Of a stretch of DNA of 64,000 nt, positions 1 to 58,382 are shown piece after piece. The DNA lies in contig CDMY01001040.1 of the NCBI GenBank assembly GCA_001179505.1, forward strand, positions 124,001 to 188,000, written 5' to 3'. A program made the position numbers and the translations under genes. Position 1 is the first letter of the stretch; each line of letters begins with the position of its first letter. Source of the DNA: Vitrella brassicaformis CCMP3155 (Eukaryota; Protista; Chromerida). The notes under the pieces are model-generated. The model was not told where the DNA came from. It searched no databases and was given only the letters and a program-made list of their open reading frames with translations.

Positions 1-769
1 CGACATCCCCGAGGTCTTATGGGGGGAGACCTCGGGGGTGGACGTGGACGCCCACGACAGGGGCGACCCACTGCCTGAGTGGGCCAAGCGAGGTCAGGAA
101 AGGGAAAGGAGGCAGAGAAGGCAAAGAGAGAGATGAAATAGACATGGATGGGTGATTCCGTCTTTATCAGACCTCGGGAGCTCATTCGGCATCGATGACA
201 TGCCCGAGGAGACGGCCGAGTGATATATATATATATATGATATGCGCGGTGAGAGAGACGGGTATCTGTCTGCACACACGACGAGAGACACAGACTTGGA
301 TGATTGACGCACGCACAAAGCCGGCTTCTTTGTTTCTACCTGTTCGATACAGACCTCGTGCGCAGCATCGGGCCCTGGCTCGACCAAGGGCTTGATGAGG
401 AGGCAGGTAAGGAGAGCGACACTCACTGGGTGCGTGTGCTTATTCATCGCTGTGTGTATGTGTTGACTGGCTGTGTGTATGCTGTATGTGCTGCATGTAG
501 AGCCGGCCAAGCCCCCGCCCAGAAGCACCCCCACGCCAGCCAGAGTGCTGCCCCCCCTCCGACGCACCAAGGAAGACGAAGGCATCACCTACACGACCTA
601 TCCCCGGGAGGTCAAGACCTGGTGGCAGCGGCTTCGGCGGGCGTTGCGGGTGGGCTGTGCGTCGTGCGGCGCAAGAAAGCCGCCCCGCTCTCGCCTCCCC
701 ACCGCAACGGTCCGCCCACAGGTCCACACAACGGACCGATGCCCCCACCTCATCAAGACTCCCTGGTGA
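1..769 (+). pseudogene. Family-X copy (3' part; exons B end, C 171-248, D ~352-406, E 501-769) with premature stop in exon C
   Basis: In-frame TGA at 221-223 followed by a (TA)n tract replaces the TGG-GTG-AAG codons seen in sister C exons. Confidence 0.7.
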
Positions 770-844
770 TGGGCGGGGGGTGGGATTTAGGGGGGGAGGG
801 AGGGATGACGGGATGGATGGATGGAGGGAGGGAGGGAAGGAATG

Positions 845-935
845 AAGGGATGAAGGGGGGGATGGAGGGAGGGATGGAGGGAGGGATGGAGGGAGGGATG
901 GCGGGAGGGATGGAGGGAGGGATGGAGGGGAGGGA
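845..935. repeat. 12-bp minisatellite (GGATGGAGGGAG)n in the family-X 3' region
   Basis: Direct tandem units; related purine tracts follow the E exon at ~10.36 kb and (inverted) ~57.07-57.19 kb. Confidence 0.8.
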
Positions 936-1089
936 CAGGGCGGGTTACTGTCCATGTGACGTGTGCCGTGGAAATACATAGCGTCTCAGACTTCATCCAT
1001 GTGTCTTGTGTCGTTGAATGAATGAAGGCCTACCTATGTCCGTCACCATCACTATCACATCGTCTGTCTCAACACACAAGGCACACACG

Positions 1090-3279
1090 TCAATCCAAAT
1101 GTGTCACCAATGAGTCCACCCAGCCCGCTACCCCTCTCCCTTCTTGACGAGCTGCCGACCGGCCGCTCGTCGGTGGTCGGAGGCGATGGCGCTGAGTGAG
1201 CAGCGCAGGTCGGCCACACCGAGGTGCTCCCTGGCTGAGACGGCGTGGACAAACGGCCAGACCAACTCGAGCGGCAGCTGCTGAAGCGCCACCACCACGC
1301 GCATCATCAGGCTGTGCAGATCCATCGGCTGCACGCACCCAAACCAACACACAACACACACACACAGAGGGAGAATATCCCCTTGTCTGTCTCTGTCCGC
1401 TGTGTTGGTGCTGTTGTCACTACTCACCTTCAGCAGGTCGACCTTTGTGAGCACCAGCTGATGGATGACGGACCGACACAGACGCCGCAGCAGATAGATG
1501 ATTAGTGGACACAAGAGCCTGTCCGTCCTCGATGTCTCCCTCGTGCCGTTCGTCTGGCCGGGCTTGCCCTCGATCACTGCCGAACAGACAGCAAGACAGT
1601 GACACAGAAGGGGAGACATGGTCACAACCTGTTGTGTTGTGACTTGTGTTGTGGCGTGCGCGACCTTCCCGCAGCACTGTCTATGTGGTTTCGGGTGCGG
1701 CTGTCGGCAGAGGGGGAGGCAGGAAGCGCGCGGCAAGAAAAGCTGCAGGGATATACATGTCTCGGAGGCGTATGCAGCGGGGGCGAGATGAGGGGCAATC
1801 TTGAAGTGCTCGTGCGCCGCACTCACACACTGGCTCTTCTCGCTATCGGTGAACTCCGGCCCAGGGGCTTTGCTGGCCAGCGTGACCACGGCAAGCTGGA
1901 AGGCCGTGAAGCTCAACTCATTGGCCTCGATCTTCCTGTCCTCCTCGTTGCCGGCCGAGACAGGGCTCCAGTATGTGCGCTGGATCGTCACCGGTGCCAG
2001 CAGTTCCGACACGTCGAAGTCGGCACACAGCTGCTGGAAACCCGACAGGGGCAAGGAGTGGCCGCCGCGTGCGTTGTGGGTGAAGAGCTGCTTCACGCGG
2101 GGGCGGATTGATGCGAGCAGCTCCTTGACCAGGGGGTCGGTGTTGATGGCCTTGACCTTCGCGGTCCCTGTGGTGTGGTCCTTGGCAACGGTTGCGTCGT
2201 ATAGGGGTTTGAGGATGTGAGTGGTGAGGAGGACCATGGGCGAGGGGTTCCCGCTCTCCATCGCCGCATGAACCTCGCGAGGCAACTCCTTCAACGCCTG
2301 GAAACACACACAAAAGCGAGACATGGACGTTTCTGGTTTGGGCGAGTGTATTGTATGTGTCCTTTTCTCATCGACCTTTAGCCACTGGTGCAGCTCCATG
2401 TGATGCCTTGTGCTGCGCACCACCCCAGCCCCCACCCCGGCCCTCCTCTCATCCTCGCCCTTGTCACCCTGCGACGGCACGGCACTCAGCGCCGTCTTGG
2501 GCAGTGTGGTGGCGGCATTGGTGTGTCGCACGAACAGCAGGTCGGCCTGCACCTGGGTGAGGGCCGGGGCGGGCAGCACGCGAAGGGGCCGGGCGGATGT
2601 TGCTGCTGTCTTGGTTGGCGGTGTCGTTGGTCAATTCTGGAGAGAGAGGCGTGAGGCCACAATGCCCGTCTCACGGAGGAAGCGGGCAAACTTGGCGGAT
2701 GAGAGGTGAGTGCGGTTCAGGGGATCTGCAGCACATTCAGTGAGGGAGGGGGGAGACACAGACAGACAGACAGACAGACAGACAACACCCCGCTGCAATT
2801 GCAGGGATCCACAACAATAGCAGCAGGAGACACACTTACTGACCAGAGCCGCGGGGGCTGGAGGGCGGTCCCGTACTTGACATTGGCCGCCAGAACCATA
2901 ACGTCCAGAAAGCGACGAAGGCTCATCTGCACCACCCCACACAGCAACAAAAGCACCACCTACCGGCAGCACGGCACACTCCCTTGCCTAAATGCATTAC
3001 CTTTGGCTGTTTGCCGGTGACTTTTGTGAAAAGGAAGTCCAGTTTGGCCGGCGTGAGGAACTGATTGAAGAGACAGGAGTCGATGGCCATCCGCTGCAGC
3101 TTCGACGACTTGAGAGACTCCGCTGCGGTCCAGCTGCGGTTCGCCAGCACATTGGACCCTCCTTCGCTTGAATAAAAGTGATACCAAAGGGGAAGGCCAG
3201 AGGCATACCAACGTCTTCTCTGTCGCCGGACGGTCCAGCTTGACAGGCGAGTCAGACTACTGAAAATTCGCTCCGACAT
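1090..3279 (-). CDS. Multi-exon protein with three TPPP/p25-alpha-like (EF-hand-like) repeats; 3' end runs into duplicated EngB exons
   Basis: Segments LKSSKLQRMAIDSCLFNQFLTPAKLDFLFTKV|MSLRRFLDVM, LSSAKFARFLRETGI..LTQVQADLLFVRH and LPLSGFQQLCADFDV..LSFTAFQLAVVTLA resemble p25-alpha repeats. ATG at 3279; exact 5' and 3' ends uncertain. Confidence 0.55.
1128..1545 (-). pseudogene. Duplicated 3' fragment of the EngB gene (last two exons plus part of preceding intron)
   Basis: Highly similar to ~10.6-11.03 kb (LVLTKVDLLK, PMDLHSLMMRVVVALQQLP..RQLVKKG); similarity stops at ~1545. Confidence 0.85.
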
Positions 3280-3518
3280 GGCATTGCCCGACTGCCTGCA
3301 ATCCCGCCTGGTGCGAACAGGTGGGTTGTGGGCTTCATCGCGTCTCTTGTGCTGAAGCGAGAAAGGAAAACGCTACTCAGAGCTTTGAGAGCCGAGACGC
3401 CCCCAGGGTCGATTCTCGACCCGAGACGGGACACGCGAAATGGAAAAAATTATCTGCAAGGTCTACCCAAGAATATGGTGGCGCTCTATCATTCGGGTTC
3501 AAGAAAGCACATGAGCAG

Positions 3519-4364
3519 GACGTCGCCACCGTCGCGCGTCCGTCGCGTCGACGGCAGCTCCCCCAGGCGGCAGCTCGTCGAGTCTGCTGCAGCTGCAGCG
3601 GACGAAGAGCCTGGACGACATCCCCGAGGTCTCATCGGAGGAGGCCTCGGAGGTGGACGCCCAGGACAACTGCGGTCCACTGCCTGAGTGGGCAAAGCGA
3701 GGTCAGGGAAGGGAAAGCAAAGAGCGAGAGAAATGGCCTTTCATGGATCATTCCGTCTTTCTTCATTGTTGCAGACATCGAGAGCGGCTGCCATTTGTGC
3801 ATCGATGGCATGCCAAGGAAACGGCCGAGTGGGTGAAGCGCGGTGAGAAACACGGACACTTATCACTACGCACGGAAGAAAGACACAGACTAGACTTGGA
3901 TGATTGGCGCACGCAAAGCCGTCTTTTTTCTTTCGACCTGTTCGATACAGCCATCATGAGGAGCATCGGGCCCTGGCTCGATGAAGGGGTCGACGAGGAG
4001 GCAGGTAAGGAGAGTGATACTCATTGACGATGCGTGTGCTTATTCATGGCTGTATTTCTGTGTTGATCGGCTCTTGTGTGCTGTGCTGTATGCAGAGCCG
4101 GCCAAGCCCCCGCCAAAGAGCACCGCCACGCCCGCAAGAATCCTTCTGCCCAACCGCTTCACCAAGGAGGACGACACCATCGTGTACAAGACGTACCCGG
4201 GGAAGAGGATGACTTGGTGGCAGCGGCTCCGGCGGGCGTTGCGGGTGGGGTGTGTCTCGTGCGGCGCCAGAAAGCCGCCCCGACCTCGGCTCCCCACCGC
4301 AACGGTGCCCCAACAGGTCCGCACCACGGACCGCTGCCCGGGTCTTGCCAAGACCCCATGGTGA
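3519..4364 (+). CDS. Family-X module set B(partial)-C-D-E, lacking its own first exon
   Basis: Canonical splice sites; E exon open to TPW-stop at 4364; no in-frame ATG identified upstream of B. Confidence 0.5.
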
Positions 4365-4404
4365 TGGGCGGGTGGGATTGGATGAAGGGAGGGCTTGTCA
4401 CGCC

Positions 4405-6129
4405 TCGACCTCGGGGGTGGACGTGGACGCCCACGACAGGGGCGGTCCACTGCCTGAGTGGGCCAAACGCGGTCAGGAAAGGAAAGGGGGCAGAAAGGGA
4501 GAGATGAATAGACTTGATGGTTTCGTCTTTATCAGACCTCGGGAGCTCATTCGGCATCGACGACTTGCCGAGGAGACGGCCGAGTGGGTCAAAAGAGGTG
4601 AGAGAGACGGGTATCTGTCTGTCTGTACACACGAGGAAAGACACAGACTTGGATGATTGACGCACGCACAAAGCCGTCTTCTTTGTTTCTACCTGTTCGA
4701 TACAGACCTGATGAGGAGCAGCGGGCCGTGGATCGATGAGGGGATCGACGAGGGAGGTAAGGAGAGTGACACTCACTGGGTGCATGTGCTTATTCATCGC
4801 TGTATGTATGTGTTGACTGGCTGTGTGCTGTGCTGTATGTGCTGCATGCAGAGCCAGCCACGGCCACCACCGACCGACGCGCGTCCGTCGCCTCGACGGC
4901 AGCTCCCCCCGGCGGCCGCTCGTCCAGCCTGCTGCACCTGCAGCAGACGGGCAGCCTCGACGACATCCCCGAGCTCTCAAGGGGGGAGACCTTGGGGATG
5001 GAGGTGGACGACAAGGGCGACCCACTGCCAGAGTGGGCAATGCGCGGTCAGAGAAGGGAAAGGAGGCAGGGAGGGAGAGAGATGCGAAAACCTTACATAA
5101 GTGGATTATTCCGTCTTTGTTCATCCTTGCAGACATCGAGAAGGGCAGCGGCTCATGGCTCGATGATATGCCCGAGGAGACGGAGGAGTGGGTGAAGCGC
5201 GGTGAGAGATACGGACATCTGTCTGCACACACGAAAAGAGACACAGACTTGGATGATGGAAGCATGAAGCCGTCTTGTTTGTTTCTACCTGTTCGATACA
5301 GACCTGATGAGGAGCATCGGGCCGTGGCTCGATGAAGGGGTCGACAAGGAGGAGGGAGGTGAGGAGAGTGATACTCATTGGCGGTGCGTGTGGAAATTCA
5401 TCACTGTATGTATGTGCTGATTGGCTCTGTGTGCTGTGCTGTATGCAGAGCCGCCCAAGCCGCCACCCAAGAGCACTCCCACGCCCGCAAGAGTGCTGCC
5501 CCCCATCCGCCGCACCAAGGAGGACGACACCGTCATGTACAAGACATACCCGGGGGAGCGGAAGACGTGGTGGAATATATATCGACTGCGGCGCGCGCTT
5601 TCGGGGGGGTGTGCCTCTTGCGGGGCCAGGAAGCCCCCCCGGCGTCCGCTCCTTACCATCGACATGTCCCAACGAGTCCACACCCCGGACCGATGCCCCG
5701 GCCTGCTGAAGACCCCATGGTGGGTGAGTGGAGTGGGTCAAGAGAGGTGAGAGAGCCGGACATCTGTCTGCACACACAAAGAGAGACACAGACTTGGATG
5801 ATGGGCGCACAAATCTGTCTTATTTGTTTCTACCTGTTCGATACAGCCATCATCAGCAGCATCGGGACGTGGCTGGATGATGGGCTCGACGACGAGGAGA
5901 AAGGTAAAGAGAGTGACACTCACTGACGATGCGTGTGCATTTTTATGTGCCGATTGGCTGTGTGTGCTGTGCTCTGTCTGCAGAGCCAGCCAAACCCCCA
6001 CCCAAGAGCACCCCCACGCCCGCCACAGTCGTCCCCCCCCACCGCTCCACCAAGGACGACAACGCCAAGTTGGACCGACGAGTCCACACGACCGATCGAT
6101 GCCCCGACCTGCTCAAGACCCCATGGTGA
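4405..6129 (+). CDS. Family-X modules B'-C-D-B-C-D-E-(C tail)-D-E(internally deleted)
   Basis: Exons e.g. B 4852-5046, C 5133-5201, D 5302-5358; first E loses its stop by fusion to a C tail (~5720); second E shortened, ending 6129. Confidence 0.5.
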
Positions 6130-6635
6130 TGGGCGCGGGGGATGGGAGCAAGGGGAGGGAAGGAGGGAGGGAGGGGGTCAGCAGGCAGGCTGTAGGCCAT
6201 GCGGCGCAGGAAAGCCGCCCCGGCCTCAACTCCCCACAGCCAGCAAGAATCCTACCGCCCCACCGCGACTCGAAGGAGGACAAGAGACGAGGGCGTGTGT
6301 GGCATTATTGCTGCCTACATTTTATATTTGTTGTACACTTTTGACACATAGCCATGCAGCCTGTGTCGATGGTCGACAGACAGACAGACAGACAGACGGA
6401 CCAACCGACTGACTGCCCATGCTGAATGGACGATATACAGCGTCTGGCTTCAAGGGCTGCAGGGCTGCAGGTGGGAAGAGGGGAAAGGAAAGGAGACAGA
6501 GAAAGAGGAGCCAGCCATCGACCGACAGCTCTAGCTCTGGTCCGTCTCCCGTTTCTCTTTCTCGTTTCTCTCTCCTCTACAGGCGTGCGGGCCTTTTGCA
6601 GAAATGAATGATTCCGTCTCTGTTCATTCCTACAG

Positions 6636-8417
6636 ACATCGAGAAGGGCTGCGGCCAATCCGGCATCGACGACATGCCCGAGGAGACGGAGGAGTGGGTG
6701 AAGCGGGGTGAGAGAGATGGACATATATCTGCTCACACGAAGAGAGACACAGACTTGGATGACGGACGGGCGCACCAAGCCGGCTTCTTTGTTTCTACCT
6801 GTTCGATACAGACATGCTGAGGTGCATCGGGCCGTGGATCGATGAGGGGGTCGACGAGAAGGAGGAAGGTAAGGAGAGTGACATTCACTGACGGTGCAAG
6901 TGGTATTTCATCGCTGTATGTATGTGTCGATTGGCTCTGTGTGCTGTGCTGCATGCAGAGCCAAGGGGACAGCCCTCGGGGGTGGACCTGCGTGACATGG
7001 ACGCTCTGCTGTCAGAGCTGGGCGAACGAGGTCAGGGAACGGAAAGAGGGAGAGACAGAGAGATGAGATAGATCAAGTTGGATGATTCCGTTCCTGTCTT
7101 TTCATCGCTACAGAGATCGAGAGCTGCTGCCGCCTGTCGATCGAGGACCGTCCTGAGAAGACGGACGAGTGGACGAAGCGCGGTGAGAAAAGCGACCACT
7201 TATCAGTAGACACGGAGAGACACGGAGAGAGACAGAGACTTGAAGGACGCACGAAGTTGTTTTCCTTGTTCCTGCCTGTTCATCGCAGCACTCACCACGC
7301 ACAGCCTCGAGCTGTGGATCGACGAGGGGATCTTCGACGACGCCAAAGGTGATGGCATGACAGATAGACAGTGATGGGCTGAGTAGGGCAGGGAACAATG
7401 CATCCAATCATGTGGCCAATGATGTGGTGTCTTCTTTGCCTGCAGCCTCACAGCACCCGCCCAAGGCCACCCCCACGCCGGCACGAGTTCTGCGCCCGCA
7501 CCGCCGCTCGAAGGAGGACGACGATATCACCTACAAGACATACCACCGCGAGGAAGGGAATGGAGGCAGAGAGAGAGAGAGAGAGGGAAAGATGAAATAG
7601 ACTTGGATGCATGGTTCTGTCTTTGTTCATTCCTACAGACATCGAAGAGGGCTGCGGCCAATACGGCATCGACGACATCCCCGAGGTCTCAAGGGGGGAG
7701 ACCTTGGGGATGGAGGTGAACGACAAGGGCGACCCACTGCCAGAGTGGGCAATGCGCGGTCAGAGAAGGGAAAGGAGGCAGGGAGGGAGAGAGATGCGAA
7801 AACCTTACATAAGTGGATTATTCCGTCTTTGTTCATCCTTGCAGACATCGAGAAGGGCAGCGGCTCATGGCTCGATGATATGCCCGAGGAGACGGAGGAG
7901 TGGGTGAAGCGCGGTGAGAGATACGGACATCTGTCTGCACACACGAAAAGAGACACAGACTTGGATGATGGCCGCATAAAGCCGTCTTGTTTGTTCCTAC
8001 CTGTTCGATACAGACCTGATGAGGAGCAGCGGGCCGTGGCTCGATGAAGGGGTCGACGAGGAGGAGGGAGGTGAGGAGAGTGACACTCACTGACGATGCG
8101 TGTGCTTATTCGTTGCTGTATGTATGCGTTGATTGGCTATGTGTGCTCTGTATGCAGCGGGCCGACGGCAGCCGCCAAAAGCCACGCCCAAGGCCACGCC
8201 CAAGCCCCCGCCCAGAAGCACCCCCACGCCCGCAAAAGTCCTGCCTCCCAGCCGCCGCACCAAGGACCACAATAACATCACCTACAGCGGAAGACTTGGT
8301 GACAGCGCTTGCGGCGAGCGCTGTCCCGAGGATGCGCATCCTGCGGCGCCAGAAAGCCGCCCCGCCCTCAACCCCCCACCGCCAAGGTTGCGGCGACAGG
8401 TGCAGACGACGGACTGA
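6636..8417 (+). pseudogene. Family-X modules C-D-B(short)-C-D-E(partial)-C/B hybrid-C-D-E(frameshifted)
   Basis: Exons C 6636-6707, short B 6959-7030, C 7114-7182; terminal E at ~8157-8417 loses the conserved C-terminal frame. Confidence 0.5.
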
Positions 8418-9249
8418 TGCCCGGACCTTGTCAAGACTCCCTGGGGCATATGGCCGAGAGGAAAGGAGGGTGTTGACTTGCTTGCTTGGGATAGAGATGT
8501 CCGTACGTTGGGCGCTTTCAGTGTGTATTCGTGTGTGCTCGGGGCTGTCGAGGTGCCATTTTTGGGGGGAAGGTGCCACCATTGCTGCCTACATTCTATA
8601 TTTGTTGTCCGTGCCTCTTCTGAGCCTGTCTGTGTGTGGAAACACAAGACAAACAATCGACATATACAGTCAATCGGCAGAGAGAGGTGCTAGCGACCGC
8701 TGCTCACTCTGTACCTCCGGGATAAGCGTGAAAAAGAGCTGGCACATCACCGTTTGAATCACTCTGGCATCCTCGTCTATGCCAGCTGGGCCAAGCTTCG
8801 GTGCTCTTCTATGTGGCCATGATTGCGCCACAGGGGCGTGCTGTCGGCGTGGCGAGGGATGGGTGGCGCTGCCAGGGGTCTCGTGCTGCCCAAGACAGTC
8901 AAAATGTGGGGCATTGTAGTGCTGGCCAGGCTCGTGTGTGAGGCGGCCATTGCGTGGGGGATGGAGGGGGGAATGCGGGCGACACTGCTCCTCAGCAGTG
9001 ACGCGGAAGGCGGCGCATCTGGCACCGCCATGGGGCTGTGGGGAGTGGCCTTGCGTGAGGCGATGATGGCTGCATGTGTGAGCGGTGTTGTGTTCGTGCT
9101 CCAGCTGGTTCGTGCTGACCTATAGGGATGTGTACCGGTCTGTCAGGGAGGTGAAAGACAGCATCGAGTCGGACAGGACGGCTGAAATGAAAAAGCAAAC
9201 GTGATCACTGGCAGCCATCATCTTAACTCGCGTCTTGCTGCGAGCTCGT

Positions 9250-10345
9250 GGGGGCGTGTCGGGGCGAGGAGACTGCGAAAGAGGTGAGTCACCGGTTCAT
9301 CCGCACTCCGACGCCACGACAGTGTATCCCTCCATCCATCCAGTCATCTCCTCCATGTGTGTGTTTCGTCAGATGATGGCCGAGATCAAGGCAAATCGGC
9401 CGCTGCCCTCGAGTGCTGCTGCTGGGGAGAGGGAGGGGAATGGGAGGGGGAGGGAGGGAAGGGGGTGGGGGAGGGGGAGAAGGGGAGGGCGGCAACGGCC
9501 GCCAGCGACCGGCGCCCCTCCGTCGCTTCAACGGCAGCCCCCCACGGCCGGTCATCGAGCCTGCTGCTGCAGCAGACGGGCAGCCTGGAGAGCATCCCCG
9601 AGGTCTCAGGGGGAGAGACCTCGGGGGTGGACGTGCATGCCAAGAGCGACCCGCTGTCCGAGCTGGGCGAGCGAGGTCAGGGAAGGGAAATGAGGCAGAG
9701 AGGGAGAGAGACGATAGAATTGCAGTGATTCCGTTTTTGTCTGTTCATCGCTACAGAGGTCGAGAAGTGCTGCCGCTTGTCCATCGAGGACACCTCCGAG
9801 AGCACAGGGGAATCGCTGAAGCGAGGTGAGAGAGACGGACATGTGTCTGCACACACGAAGAGAGACACAGACTTGGATGATGGGTGCACGCACAAAGCCG
9901 TCCTCTTTGTTTCTACCTGTTCGATACAGCGCTCACGACGTACAGCATCGAGCCCTGGCTCGACCAAGGGCTCGACGACGAGGAGGAGGAAGGTAAGGAG
10001 AGTGACACTCACTGGTGGCGCGTGTGCTTATTCATCGCTGTATATATGTGTTGATTGGCTCTGTGTGCTCTGTCTACAGCCTCACAACAGCCGCCAAAGG
10101 CCACGCCCACCCCAGCAAGAGTGCTCCCGCCCACCCGCCGCACCAAGGAGGACAACACCATCCACTACAAGTCCTACCCCCGGGAAATCAAGACATGGTG
10201 GAATCGAATGCGGCGGGTGCTGTCGGTGGGGTTTGCCTCATGCGGTGGAAGAATGCCGCCCCGATCTCGCCTACCCACCGCCACGGTGCGCCAAGAGGTT
10301 CAGACAACGGACCGATGCCCCCACCTTGCCAAGACCCCCTGGTGA
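9250..10345 (+). CDS. Near-complete family-X copy (partial exon A, B 9373-9675, C, D, E to 10345); no in-frame ATG
   Basis: Collinear reverse complement of the intact copy at 57213-58382; in-frame TGA at 9202-9204 precedes exon A. Confidence 0.55.
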
Positions 10346-10602
10346 TGGGCGCGGGGGGTTGAGGGAGGGAGGGAGGGAGGGGAGGGAGGGAGGGAAGGGA
10401 CAGGGCGGGTTATTGTCCATGTGACGTGTGCCGTGGGTAATAAACAGTGTCTCAGACTTCATCCATGTGGCTTGTGTCGATGAATAAAGGCCTACCTATG
10501 TCCGTCAACAAGATCACTATCACATCGTCTCAACACACAAGGCTACAGACACACGTCAGTCCCAATGTGTCACTAATGAGTCCACCCAGCCCGCTACCAC
10601 CT

Positions 10603-57212: not shown

Positions 57213-58382
57213 TCACCAGGGAGTCTTGATGAGGTGGGGGCATCGGTCCGTTGTGCGGACCTGTGGGCCGGGCGGCTTGCCGGTGGGTAGGCGAGGCCGG
57301 GGCGGCTTTCGGGCGCCGCACGATGAACACCCCACTCGCAGCGCCCGCCGGAGCCGCTGCCACCATGACTTCCGCTCCCCCGGGTACTTGTTGTAGGTGA
57401 TGTTGGTGTCGTCCTTGGTGCGGCGGAGGGGGAGGAGCACTTTGGCTGGGGTGGGGGTGCTTCTGGGCAGGGGCTTGGGCGTGGCCTTGGGCGTGGCCTT
57501 GGGCGTGGCCTTGGGCGTGGCCTTGGGCGGCTGCTGTGGGCCCGCTGCATACAGAGCACACAGAGCCAATCAACACATACATACAGCAATGAATAAGCAC
57601 ATGCATCGTCAGTGAGTGTCACTCTCCTTACCTTCCTCCTCGTCGAGCCCCTGGTCGAGCCAGGGCTCGATGCTGCTTATGATGCCTGTAACGAACAGGC
57701 AGAAACAAGGAAGACGGCTTTGTGCGTGCGCCAATCATCCAATTCTGTGTCTCTCTTCGTGTGTACAGATAAGTGTCCGTTTCTCTCACCCCCTTCGGTC
57801 CACTCCTCCGTGCTCTCGGGGCCGTCCTCCATCGACAGGCGGCAGCTGTCCTCGATGCCTGTAGCGACGAAGAAAGATGGAACCATCCATTTAGCAAGTC
57901 TGTCTCTCTCTGCCTCCTTTCCTTTCCCTGACCTCGGTCGCCGAGCTCGGACAGCGGATCGCCCCTGGCATGAGCATCCACCCCCGAGGTCTCCCCCCCT
58001 GAGACCTCGGGGATGCTCTCGAGGCTGCCCGTCTGCTGCAGCAGAAGCAGACTCGATGACCGGCCGTGGGGAGCTGCCGTCGAAGCGACGGACGCGCGCC
58101 GGTCGGTGGCGGCCGTGGCTGGCTCCCCCCCCTCCCCCTTCCCCTTCCCTCCCTCCCACTCCCCAGCAATCGCAGCAGCTGTGGGCAGCAGCGCCCGAGC
58201 TTCCTTGCTCTCGGCCATCATCTGACGAAACACACACATGGAGGAGATGACTGGATGGAGGGAGGGATACACTGTCGTGGCGTCGGAGTGCGGATGAACC
58301 GGTGACTCACCTCTTCGCAGTCTCCTCGCCCCCAGCGCCCCCGTGAGTTCGGGCCCCTTGACCCTGCAAACCCTTGACCCAT
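57213..58382 (-). CDS. Intact 5-exon family-X gene, 271 aa, unknown function
   Basis: Exons 58382-58311, 58221-57933, 57858-57790, 57685-57632, 57544-57213 total 816 nt, open from MGQGFAG to KTPW-stop. Confidence 0.75.

What the first reader, a model, noticed from the sequence alone, without database searches (positions are those of the whole stretch)
3500..10345. Array of symmetric phase-1 cassette exons with multiple alternative terminal exons
Seen: every cassette I measured starts and ends in phase 1 with a length divisible by 3 (B 4852-5046 = 195, C 5133-5201 = 69, D 5302-5358 = 57, C 6636-6707 = 72, B 6959-7030 = 72, C 7114-7182 = 69, B 9373-9675 = 303). Module order is scrambled (B-C-D-B-C-D-E, C-D-B-C-D-E), with six E-type last exons. 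Splice sites are largely intact, yet none of these copies has an obvious ATG exon. B and C share DD(I/M)PE..EW.KR-G, and a C/B hybrid is formed at that microhomology (~7670). Inference: either a birth-and-death graveyard or a combinatorial splicing locus able to join any cassettes in frame to different C-termini.
Basis: partly seen in the sequence, partly recalled or inferred. Interest (0 to 1): 0.75.

Follow-up and report, generated by a model that had tools for sequence, protein, structure and literature searches.

The report
Decaying tandem array of orphan-gene exons
This stretch of the alga Vitrella brassicaformis is a pile-up of whole and partial copies of one small four-exon gene found only in this species; most copies here are broken, so it looks like ordinary gene birth and death, not a mix-and-match splicing machine.

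Summary
All stated coordinates, lengths, the phase-1 symmetry, six E-type last exons and the C/B hybrid at about 7670 check out.

- Three C exons are frame-broken.
- Only two of the six E exons are intact and full-length.
- An ATG exon does exist at 9373, behind a conserved 570-nt upstream block.

The window is Vitrella brassicaformis CCMP3155. The modules belong to an orphan family, B(ATG)-C-D-E, about 220-250 aa and predicted disordered. It has no Pfam match and no relatives outside Vitrella. Copies lie only in a few clusters on two contigs, plus one distant copy on a third.

The array at 3391-8450 has its own conserved 5' "head". Three arrays in the genome share it. Its ATG is out of frame in this copy.

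Junctions between modules sit at short shared sequences, and some scrambled units recur at 94% identity in a sister array. Since those arrays separated, their cassettes have evolved neutrally (pN/pS 1.01). Intact family members show constraint (0.35-0.64 for B-D, 0.37 for E).

Best reading (0.7): birth-and-death by unequal recombination among symmetric exon-plus-intron modules, leaving mostly dead cassettes. Combinatorial splicing is not excluded, because no RNA data were reachable, but nothing supports it. Earlier notes of this scan describe similar exon arrays elsewhere in this genome.

The parts
1..1040 (+). Unit 0, 3' part of a full-length family gene. Its upstream block U and ATG exon lie just upstream of the window. 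B end 1-92; C 171-248 with a (TA)n insertion and a stop; D 353-406; E 501-769, intact, stop at 767-769; 3' flank T 770-1040.
   Evidence: The B exon from the ATG is 276 nt (mod 3 = 0), so it is out of frame.
3391..3524 (+). Array 'head' H: a conserved non-U 5' region with an ATG at 3478. It is shared by the three head-led arrays in the genome. It lies head-to-head with the minus-strand gene at about 1100-3343.
   Evidence: 92-100% identity, and 47 nt are 100% identical in all three. The ATG frame ends at TGA 3688, giving a 70-aa ORF, and is not the B frame.
3525..4364 (+). Unit 1: 5'-truncated B 3525-3701; C 3775-3842 (68 nt, frameshift); D 3951-4004; E 4096-4364 (intact, with stop).
4395..4756 (+). 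Unit 2: B fragment 4407-4472 fused to the remnant of the preceding 3' flank, with no acceptor; C 4536-4597 (62 nt, frameshift); D 4706-4756.
4852..5746 (+). Unit 3: B 4852-5046, entered through an E-type acceptor; C 5133-5201; D 5302-5358; E 5449-5722, stop lost and fused to a C tail 5723-5746 (298 nt in all, out of frame for the next exon).
5847..6283 (+). Unit 4: D 5847-5903; E 5984-6130 with an in-frame internal deletion that removes the WWQRLRRAL...CxxC core; E debris 6198-6283.
6636..7550 (+). Unit 5: C 6636-6707; D 6812-6868; short B 6959-7030 (E-type acceptor); C2 7114-7182; D2 7289-7348; E 7446-7550, truncated and fused to intron-1 sequence with no donor.
   Evidence: The same scrambled unit occurs twice in the sister array at about 94% identity.
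7639..8440 (+). Unit 6: C/B hybrid 7639-7758; C 7845-7913; D 8014-8070; E 8158-8440 with a 16-nt deletion, a 1-nt insertion and in-frame TGAs.
   Evidence: 7666-7965 is 99% identical to 4954-5253.
8800..9372 (+). U: conserved non-coding upstream block (putative promoter, 5'UTR exon and leader intron) of full-length family genes.
   Evidence: Seven copies in the genome, 86-98% identical. Indels are not multiples of 3, so it is not coding.
9373..10500 (+). Unit 7, a full-length gene: B/ATG exon 9373-9675 (ATG out of frame with the rest); C 9757-9825; D 9930-9992; E 10080-10345; 3' flank T 10346-10500. It is annotated (P0005) with an alternative upstream start exon taken from U.
57213..58221 (-). 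Intact family member outside the finding: B 57933-58221, C 57790-57858, D 57632-57685, E 57213-57544. It is a 247-codon open reading frame with canonical splice sites.

Best explanation
The region is a birth-and-death cluster of a Vitrella-specific orphan gene.

**The gene.** The ancestral gene has four coding exons. B carries the ATG and sits behind a conserved non-coding block U. C and D follow. E is the last exon. Together they encode a protein of about 220-250 aa that is predicted to be disordered, with acidic Trp-containing repeats and a basic Cys-containing tail ending in KTPW. B-core and C share one peptide pattern and D carries a similar motif, so they look like old duplicates of one exon-plus-intron unit. 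That is why all are phase 1-1.

**The mechanism (inferred).** This repetitiveness lets unequal or non-allelic recombination and microhomology-mediated joining duplicate, delete and fuse modules without regard to gene boundaries. It produced the head-led array at 3391-8450, which was then copied to two more loci by segmental duplication.

**The state of this copy.** The array cannot encode a canonical family protein:
- the head ATG is out of frame;
- two of the array's own C exons are frameshifted;
- four of its five E exons are damaged;
- its cassettes have drifted neutrally since the arrays separated.

**Shown:** the structure, the lesions, the junctions, the paralogy and the selection contrast.

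**Inferred:** the recombination mechanism and the lack of function.

**Unknown:** whether the array is transcribed from its conserved head, and what the family protein does.
For: **Organism and orphan status**
- Vitrella brassicaformis CCMP3155.
- no Pfam match.
- a scan of 1.8 billion representative proteins found only two Vitrella proteins plus low-complexity noise.
- five annotated Vitrella paralogues.
- pLDDT 0.46.

**Canonical gene model**
- P0002, 220 aa, is B-C-D-E starting at the exon-B ATG.
- An intact 247-codon copy lies at 57213-58221(-).

**Distribution**
- Family DNA is confined to C1040 (45.7-53.4k, 123.2-134.3k, 181.2k) and C333 (44.4k, 110.6-116.3k).
- One distant copy lies on C238.

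**Lesions and fusions:**

**Shared scrambled units and shared 5' boundary between arrays:**

**Selection**
- E-exon dN/dS is 0.37 pooled over nine copies.
- B+C+D in intact genes: 0.35-0.64.
- Cassettes compared between positional counterparts: nd 38/643 and sd 11/188, ratio 1.01. This rejects 0.37 at p = 0.002.
- Terminal-branch omega is about 0.7-0.95 for the array E exons. It is 0.13-0.43 for four E exons that end U-led genes or a terminal array unit (small counts).

**Introns:** no conserved RNA structure or covariation.
Against: - All inspected splice dinucleotides in the array are intact, and introns 2 and 3 are 81-94% identical across the family. They are less diverged than four-fold sites of the E exon (0.12-0.14 against 0.34-0.38). 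Ongoing use or gene conversion could explain this.
- The array has a strongly conserved 5' head.
- In the sister array a 4-nt deletion puts the head ATG in frame with B (P0006).
- The public annotation, made by Augustus with RNA-seq intron hints (PMC4501334), places a 229-aa model (P0007) on 6612-8440.
- E 4096 and E 5449 differ from each other with dN/dS 0.37, so their decay must be fairly recent.
- The substitution counts behind the neutrality test are small, and they come mostly from the weakly constrained B, C and D exons. Against omega 0.5 the test is only marginal (my estimate p about 0.04, not computed in a script).
- Two of the full-length genes judged 'broken' fail only through a frame shift in a (GGGA)n tract, where assembly error is conceivable.
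Confidence: 0.7

Rival explanations
1. The array is a working transcription unit driven by the conserved head. Its symmetric phase-1 cassettes are alternatively included or skipped, so damaged ones are simply skipped, and joined to alternative E-type last exons. The output is a repertoire of disordered acidic-Trp repeat proteins.
For: - All cassettes are phase 1-1 with canonical splice sites.
- Intron ends are near-invariant.
- The head is conserved in three arrays.
- Annotated models P0006 and P0007 thread several cassettes while skipping others.
- In the D exons all length differences are multiples of 3, whereas intron indels are not.
Against: - There is no in-frame start. The head ATG stops at 3688, and the B frame is closed by a TGA at 3512.
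- P0007 starts at an ATG inside the tail of intron 1 and ends in a frameshifted E that lacks the family's conserved core.
- Cassettes have evolved neutrally since the array duplicated.
- No docking or selector complementarity or covariation was found. The one 18-nt GT/CA-rich match at 8521-8538 lies outside the part conserved in the sister array.
- Each E carries its own stop, and only some keep the 3' flank.
Confidence: 0.1
2. The array is a silent reservoir of cassettes. It exchanges sequence with the few intact family genes by gene conversion, as pseudogene donor arrays do in some antigen and immune gene families. Its value would lie in diversifying or repairing the expressed copies.
For: - Similarity is patchy and discordant. 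U of unit 7 is 98% identical to U of unit 0, while their E exons have dS 0.53 and their B exons are about 79% identical.
- A 300-nt patch is 99% identical between units 3 and 6.
- Hybrid exons occur, such as the C exon at L028 4052-4120, which joins two C subtypes.
- Non-coding backbone segments are more alike than synonymous sites and show a younger-looking, transition-rich spectrum.
Against: - Only about three intact recipients exist.
- No directional donor-to-recipient tracts were shown.
- The same patterns follow from ordinary concerted evolution with no function for the array.
- Across three independent unit pairs, exon and intron divergence differ only modestly (0.24 against 0.18).
Confidence: 0.1
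3. Part of the scrambling is an assembly artefact of a short-read assembly across near-identical repeats, through mis-joins or collapses.
For: - The sister array contains 1200 N in several gaps. One annotated protein there (P0001) is predicted across a gap.
- Near-identical 300-nt repeats exist inside the window.
Against: - The window array has no N.
- Most neighbouring units differ by 15-25%, enough to assemble.
- The same junctions (truncated E fused to intron 1; short B behind an E acceptor; head fused to truncated B) recur at independent loci with their own substitutions.
Confidence: 0.05

Closest known systems
Birth-and-death multigene families with tandem partial duplicates and pseudogene fragments (Nei-type model; from general knowledge)
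   Same: Tandem and segmental duplication; a mix of intact, recently disabled and fragmentary copies; purifying selection on intact members and relaxed constraint on the others; patchy gene conversion.
   Different: The unit of duplication is often a piece of a gene, namely exon-plus-intron modules. This gives chimeric orders such as B-C-D-B-C-D-E. The family is a species-restricted orphan with no known domain.
Tandem cassette-exon clusters with mutually exclusive splicing, such as insect Dscam1 exon clusters (from general knowledge)
   Same: Arrays of duplicated exons of like phase with conserved flanking intron ends.
   Different: Here the arrays include terminal exons with stops. Many cassettes are frame-broken. 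No constitutive in-frame start exon exists. No docking or selector RNA pairing or covariation was found. The cassettes evolve neutrally.
Exon duplication and shuffling through symmetric phase 1-1 exons (Patthy's rule; from general knowledge)
   Same: All internal exons are phase 1-1, so duplication or loss keeps the frame. The gene itself appears to have grown by exon-plus-intron duplication.
   Different: The modules are short disordered repeats, not folded domains. Much of the shuffling here also crosses gene ends (E to B, 3' flank to B, E to intron 1).
Other exon-plus-intron arrays noted in this same genome by this scan (FKBP-like, LRR and AP2 arrays)
   Same: Same organism and the same process of tandem exon-plus-intron duplication with some broken units. 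Earlier follow-ups also found no sign of mix-and-match splicing.
   Different: Those arrays sit inside one gene with a recognisable domain. This one is a cluster of whole and partial genes of an orphan family. I did not re-test those notes.

Membership tests
Combinatorial or mutually exclusive cassette-splicing locus (Dscam-like) | One transcription unit with a promoter and an in-frame start exon upstream of the cassettes | tested here: not met
   A conserved head exists, but its ATG at 3478 is out of frame and stops at 3688. The B frame has a TGA at 3512 and no ATG. U and the canonical ATG exon are absent from 3391-8450.
Combinatorial or mutually exclusive cassette-splicing locus (Dscam-like) | Cassettes are interchangeable, intact and under selection | tested here: not met
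   Two of the array's C exons are frameshifted (a third, in unit 0 outside the array, carries a stop). Only one of the array's five E exons is intact (two of the six in the finding region). pN/pS is 1.01 between positional counterparts.
Combinatorial or mutually exclusive cassette-splicing locus (Dscam-like) | Competing RNA pairings (docking and selector sites) or another conserved intronic structure | tested here: inconclusive
   RNAalifold on 15 copies each of introns 2 and 3 gave about -6.5 to -6.9 kcal/mol and no compensatory pairs. The inverted-repeat scan gave only low-complexity or exon-internal matches. Absence of predicted pairing is weak evidence.
Combinatorial or mutually exclusive cassette-splicing locus (Dscam-like) | Transcripts that join cassettes in several combinations | not testable with these tools
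Birth-and-death tandem gene family | Several paralogues in tandem or segmental clusters, with both intact and disabled members | tested here: met
   There are about seven ATG-exon-bearing genes. About three are intact: C333:44.4k, window 57.2-58.2k(-), and C1040:51.5k, which is partly in a gap.
Birth-and-death tandem gene family | Purifying selection on intact members and relaxed constraint on the disabled ones | tested here: met
   Omega is 0.35-0.64 (B-D) and 0.37 (E), against 1.01 for array cassettes. Counts are small.
Birth-and-death tandem gene family | Rearrangement junctions explained by homology or microhomology between repeats | tested here: met
   The C/B switch lies in a shared 16-nt motif. 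An E acceptor is joined to the B interior at AGCC. E is joined to intron 1 near GAGGTCA. The E end is joined to a C tail.

The most novel reading that the evidence does not exclude
The three head-led arrays are real transcription units. The near-invariant intron backbone lets the spliceosome include or skip symmetric cassettes, bypassing damaged ones, and choose among alternative E ends. This would give a small alga a splicing-generated repertoire of disordered acidic-Trp repeat proteins from an orphan family.
Probability: 0.08. Interest if true: 0.7.

Novelty: new member of a known kind. Interest (0 to 1): 0.25.

Why it matters
The result adds a clear, well-mapped case of how symmetric exon-plus-intron modules are duplicated, fused and lost in a chromerid genome, and of an orphan gene family caught in rapid turnover. 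It also flags that two public Vitrella gene models here are doubtful: one starts inside an intron and ends in a frameshifted exon, and one is predicted across an assembly gap. It does not open a new mechanism. The only route to higher interest is RNA evidence that the conserved array head drives cassette-shuffled transcripts.

Tried and rejected
- **Known domain.** Pfam on single exons and on the annotated proteins gave nothing. The ESM Atlas gave only sub-threshold look-alikes and a disordered model.
- **Relatives outside Vitrella.** None were found with the E exon against 1.8 billion representatives. The Anolis 'trichohyalin-like' hit is a low-complexity repeat.
- **U as a coding first exon**, as used in annotated P0005. 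Rejected: indels among the six copies are not multiples of 3, and variable sites show no codon periodicity.
- **Introns as mobile 'introner' elements.** Rejected: introns 2 and 3 occur only at family loci.
- **Introns holding a conserved RNA structure.** No support.
- **'Introns far more conserved than exons', suggesting accelerated exon evolution.** I pursued this. Four-fold sites of E (0.34-0.38) do exceed introns 2 and 3 (0.12-0.14). Neither CpG nor base composition explains that. But intron 1 is as diverged as the exons, and whole-exon against whole-intron divergence in three independent pairs is only 0.24 against 0.18. I keep it as a minor unexplained point, not a claim.
- **Long minus-strand ORFs over the array** (368 aa at 4159-5265). 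Treated as a by-product of the purine skew of the plus strand. Not searched further.
- **Joined spliced models.** One script joined the four exons of the copy at 57213-58221(-) only to count frame and stops.
- **Human sequence.** Nothing here looks human.
Full report
**What the sequence is**

The window has about 60% G+C and short GT-AG introns of about 90 nt. It is contig C1040:124001-188000 of a 72.7-Mb genome. Proteins that match it letter for letter are deposited as Vitrella brassicaformis CCMP3155.

**Check of the observation**

Direct-repeat families cover the whole of 3500-10345 and include introns as well as exons. They read in phase 1 as acidic, Trp-containing peptides.

Six E-type exons are present, starting at 4096, 5449, 5984, 7446, 8158 and 10080, with more E debris at 6198-6283. 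The C/B hybrid at 7639-7758 is real. It switches inside a motif shared by C and B, and from 7666 on it is 99% identical to 4954-5253.

- C 3775-3842 (68 nt) and C 4536-4597 (62 nt) each lack one base within the same CCC run of the consensus.
- C 171-248 has a (TA)n insertion with a stop.
- E 5449 has lost its stop and runs into a C tail, out of frame for the next exon.
- E 5984 has an in-frame deletion of the conserved core.
- E 7446 is cut at position 106 and fused to intron-1 sequence, with no donor.
- E 8158 has a 16-nt deletion and in-frame TGAs.

**The gene behind the modules**

A full HMMER scan with the E exon (searched by reference, as a single exon) found only two Vitrella proteins plus low-complexity noise. 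One of them, P0002 (CEM02689.1, 220 aa, contig C333), is exactly B-C-D-E and starts at the ATG that opens exon B.

Exon B at 9373 starts ATGATG directly after its acceptor, so an ATG exon does exist. It sits behind a 570-nt block U (8800-9372). U occurs seven times in the genome, always in front of such an exon, at 86-98% identity. U is not coding, because its indels are not multiples of three.

For the ATG to be in frame with the rest, exon B must have length 3n+1. This holds in three copies: C333:44.4k, C1040:51.5k and window 57933-58221(-). It fails in unit 7 (9373; 303 nt), in unit 0 (276 nt) and in the copy at C333:110.6k, whose ATGs are also mutated. The shift lies in a (GGGA)n tract.

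The copy at 57213-58221(-) is an intact 247-codon frame. That script joined the exons only to check frame and stops.

The family has no Pfam match and is predicted disordered (pLDDT 0.46). Five annotated paralogues exist, all in Vitrella.

**Layout of the window cluster**

- Unit 0 is a U-led gene that ends at 769, with its 3' flank running to 1040.
- An unrelated minus-strand gene lies at about 1100-3343.
- An array runs from 3391 to 8450.
- U follows at 8800-9372.
- Unit 7 is a U-led gene at 9373-10345.

The array has no U. It begins with a different conserved 'head' (3391-3524) fused to a 5'-truncated B.

The same head opens two other arrays, at C1040:45.7k and C333:115.6k. Identity there is 92-100%, and 47 nt are identical in all three. 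The C333 locus is an 85%-identical segmental copy of unit 0 + minus gene + head.

The head ATG (3478) is out of frame with B in the window and on C333, giving a 70-codon ORF that stops at 3688. It is in frame only in the C1040:45.7k array, thanks to a 4-nt deletion. That array carries the annotated model P0006.

**Junctions**

Module fusions sit at short shared sequences:
- C to B in GACGACAT(C/G)CCCGAGG;
- an E acceptor to the B interior at AGCC (4852, 6959);
- a 3' flank to the B interior (about 4395);
- the E end to a C tail (5722);
- E position 106 to intron 1 (7551).

The scrambled unit short-B / C2 / D2 / truncated-E / intron-1 recurs twice in the sister array at about 94% identity, with the same junctions. 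The scrambling therefore predates the segmental duplications and is not an artefact of this assembly.

**Selection**

| Comparison | Result |
|---|---|
| E exon, nine readable copies | pooled dN/dS 0.37 |
| B+C+D in the three intact genes | 0.35-0.64 |
| Array cassettes against positional counterparts (sister array, or the 99% internal duplicate) | nd 38/643, sd 11/188, ratio 1.01 |
| Terminal branches, array E exons | omega about 0.7-0.95 |
| Terminal branches, four E exons that end U-led genes or a terminal array unit | omega 0.13-0.43 (small counts) |

The 1.01 ratio fits neutrality and rejects 0.37 (p = 0.002). Against 0.5 it is only marginal. E 4096 and E 5449 still differ from each other with dN/dS 0.37, so they were constrained for most of their separate history and their decay is fairly recent.

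**Points that argue for some continuing role**

- Every splice dinucleotide I inspected in the array is intact.
- Intron ends are almost invariant.
- Introns 2 and 3 are family-specific and 81-94% identical.
- Four-fold sites of E are 2-3 times more diverged than these introns. Neither CpG nor base composition explains that, and the substitution spectrum differs: C/G interchange dominates at third positions, transitions dominate in the introns.

However, intron 1 is as diverged as the exons. Over three independent unit pairs, exon and intron divergence are 0.24 and 0.18. I found no conserved RNA structure or covariation and no credible docking-type complementarity.

Patchy gene conversion is the simplest account. 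U is 98% identical between units 0 and 7, yet their E exons have dS 0.53. A 300-nt patch is 99% identical between units 3 and 6. Conversion would also keep dead cassettes looking healthy.

**The public annotation**

Vitrella models were made with Augustus using RNA-seq intron hints (PMC4501334).
- P0007 (229 aa) lies on 6612-8440. It starts at an ATG in the tail of intron 1, skips all three D exons and the truncated E, and ends in the frameshifted E 8158.
- P0005 rescues unit 7 by borrowing an upstream ORF from non-coding U.
- P0001 is predicted across an N gap.

These models do not show that the cassettes are used.

**Verdict**

The interpretation that fits is birth and death of an orphan gene family by unequal recombination among symmetric exon-plus-intron modules. 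The 3391-8450 array is a mostly dead by-product that has itself been copied twice.

Whether its conserved head still drives transcription is open. A splicing-based repertoire is not excluded but has no positive support.

Earlier notes of this scan describe other exon-plus-intron arrays in this genome, with the same negative outcome for mix-and-match splicing. I did not re-test them.

Noticed in passing
window 8800-9372; also C1040:123248-123816, C333:110617-111176, C333:45358-45909(-), C1040:50925-51470, C1040:49960-50479: The 570-nt non-coding block U is much more alike between copies (86-98%) than the coding exons behind it (about 75-85%). Its last 87 nt, the putative leader intron or core promoter, are the most conserved part of the whole gene (diversity 0.04). 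Units 0 and 7 share 98% in U but have dS 0.53 in E.
   Followed up: partly
window 57213-58351 (-): An intact 247-codon family member lies far from the array. It keeps only the last 132 nt of U, which suggests that the essential promoter or leader lies in that part.
   Followed up: partly
L029 (C238:133500-139500), minus strand, around C238:136521-136628: A distant paralogue of the family with the same layout: RRMSVASTAA...ESVPED, then an acidic Trp-containing exon, then YTSYPREAATWWNKLKGAFRFCHSC. It may be the older, single-copy relative. Its annotation and any homologues outside Vitrella were not searched.
   Followed up: partly
window 3619-3655 and every other B exon (e.g. 9593-9629): The B exon contains an internal palindrome, CCCGAGGTCTC...GAGACCTCGGG, encoding IPEVS.GETSG. 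It lies right at the switch point of the C/B hybrid and could be a recombination hotspot. Not tested.
   Followed up: no
window 1100-3343 (-): A minus-strand multi-exon gene lies head-to-head with the array head. It has no Pfam match on its longest ORF (483 aa). An 85%-identical copy sits in the same position on C333.
   Followed up: partly
L025 (C1040:43000-52999), N runs first seen at locus position 3462 and last at 9698: The sister array has 1200 N in several gaps. The annotated protein P0001 (CEM39486.1, 364 aa) repeats a block across one of them, and its C-terminus reads into a poly-G tract, so that model is unreliable.
   Followed up: partly
window 789-935, 9425-9489, 10361-10400: (GGGA)n-type purine repeats flank the E stop codons and fill the N-terminal part of exon B. 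The frame shifts that disable units 0 and 7 lie in such a tract.
   Followed up: partly
window 4159-5265 (-) and 5121-5810 (-): ORFs of 368 and 229 aa run antisense through array exons and introns. They are Ser/Pro/Leu/Arg-rich and are probably a by-product of the purine skew of the plus strand.
   Followed up: no
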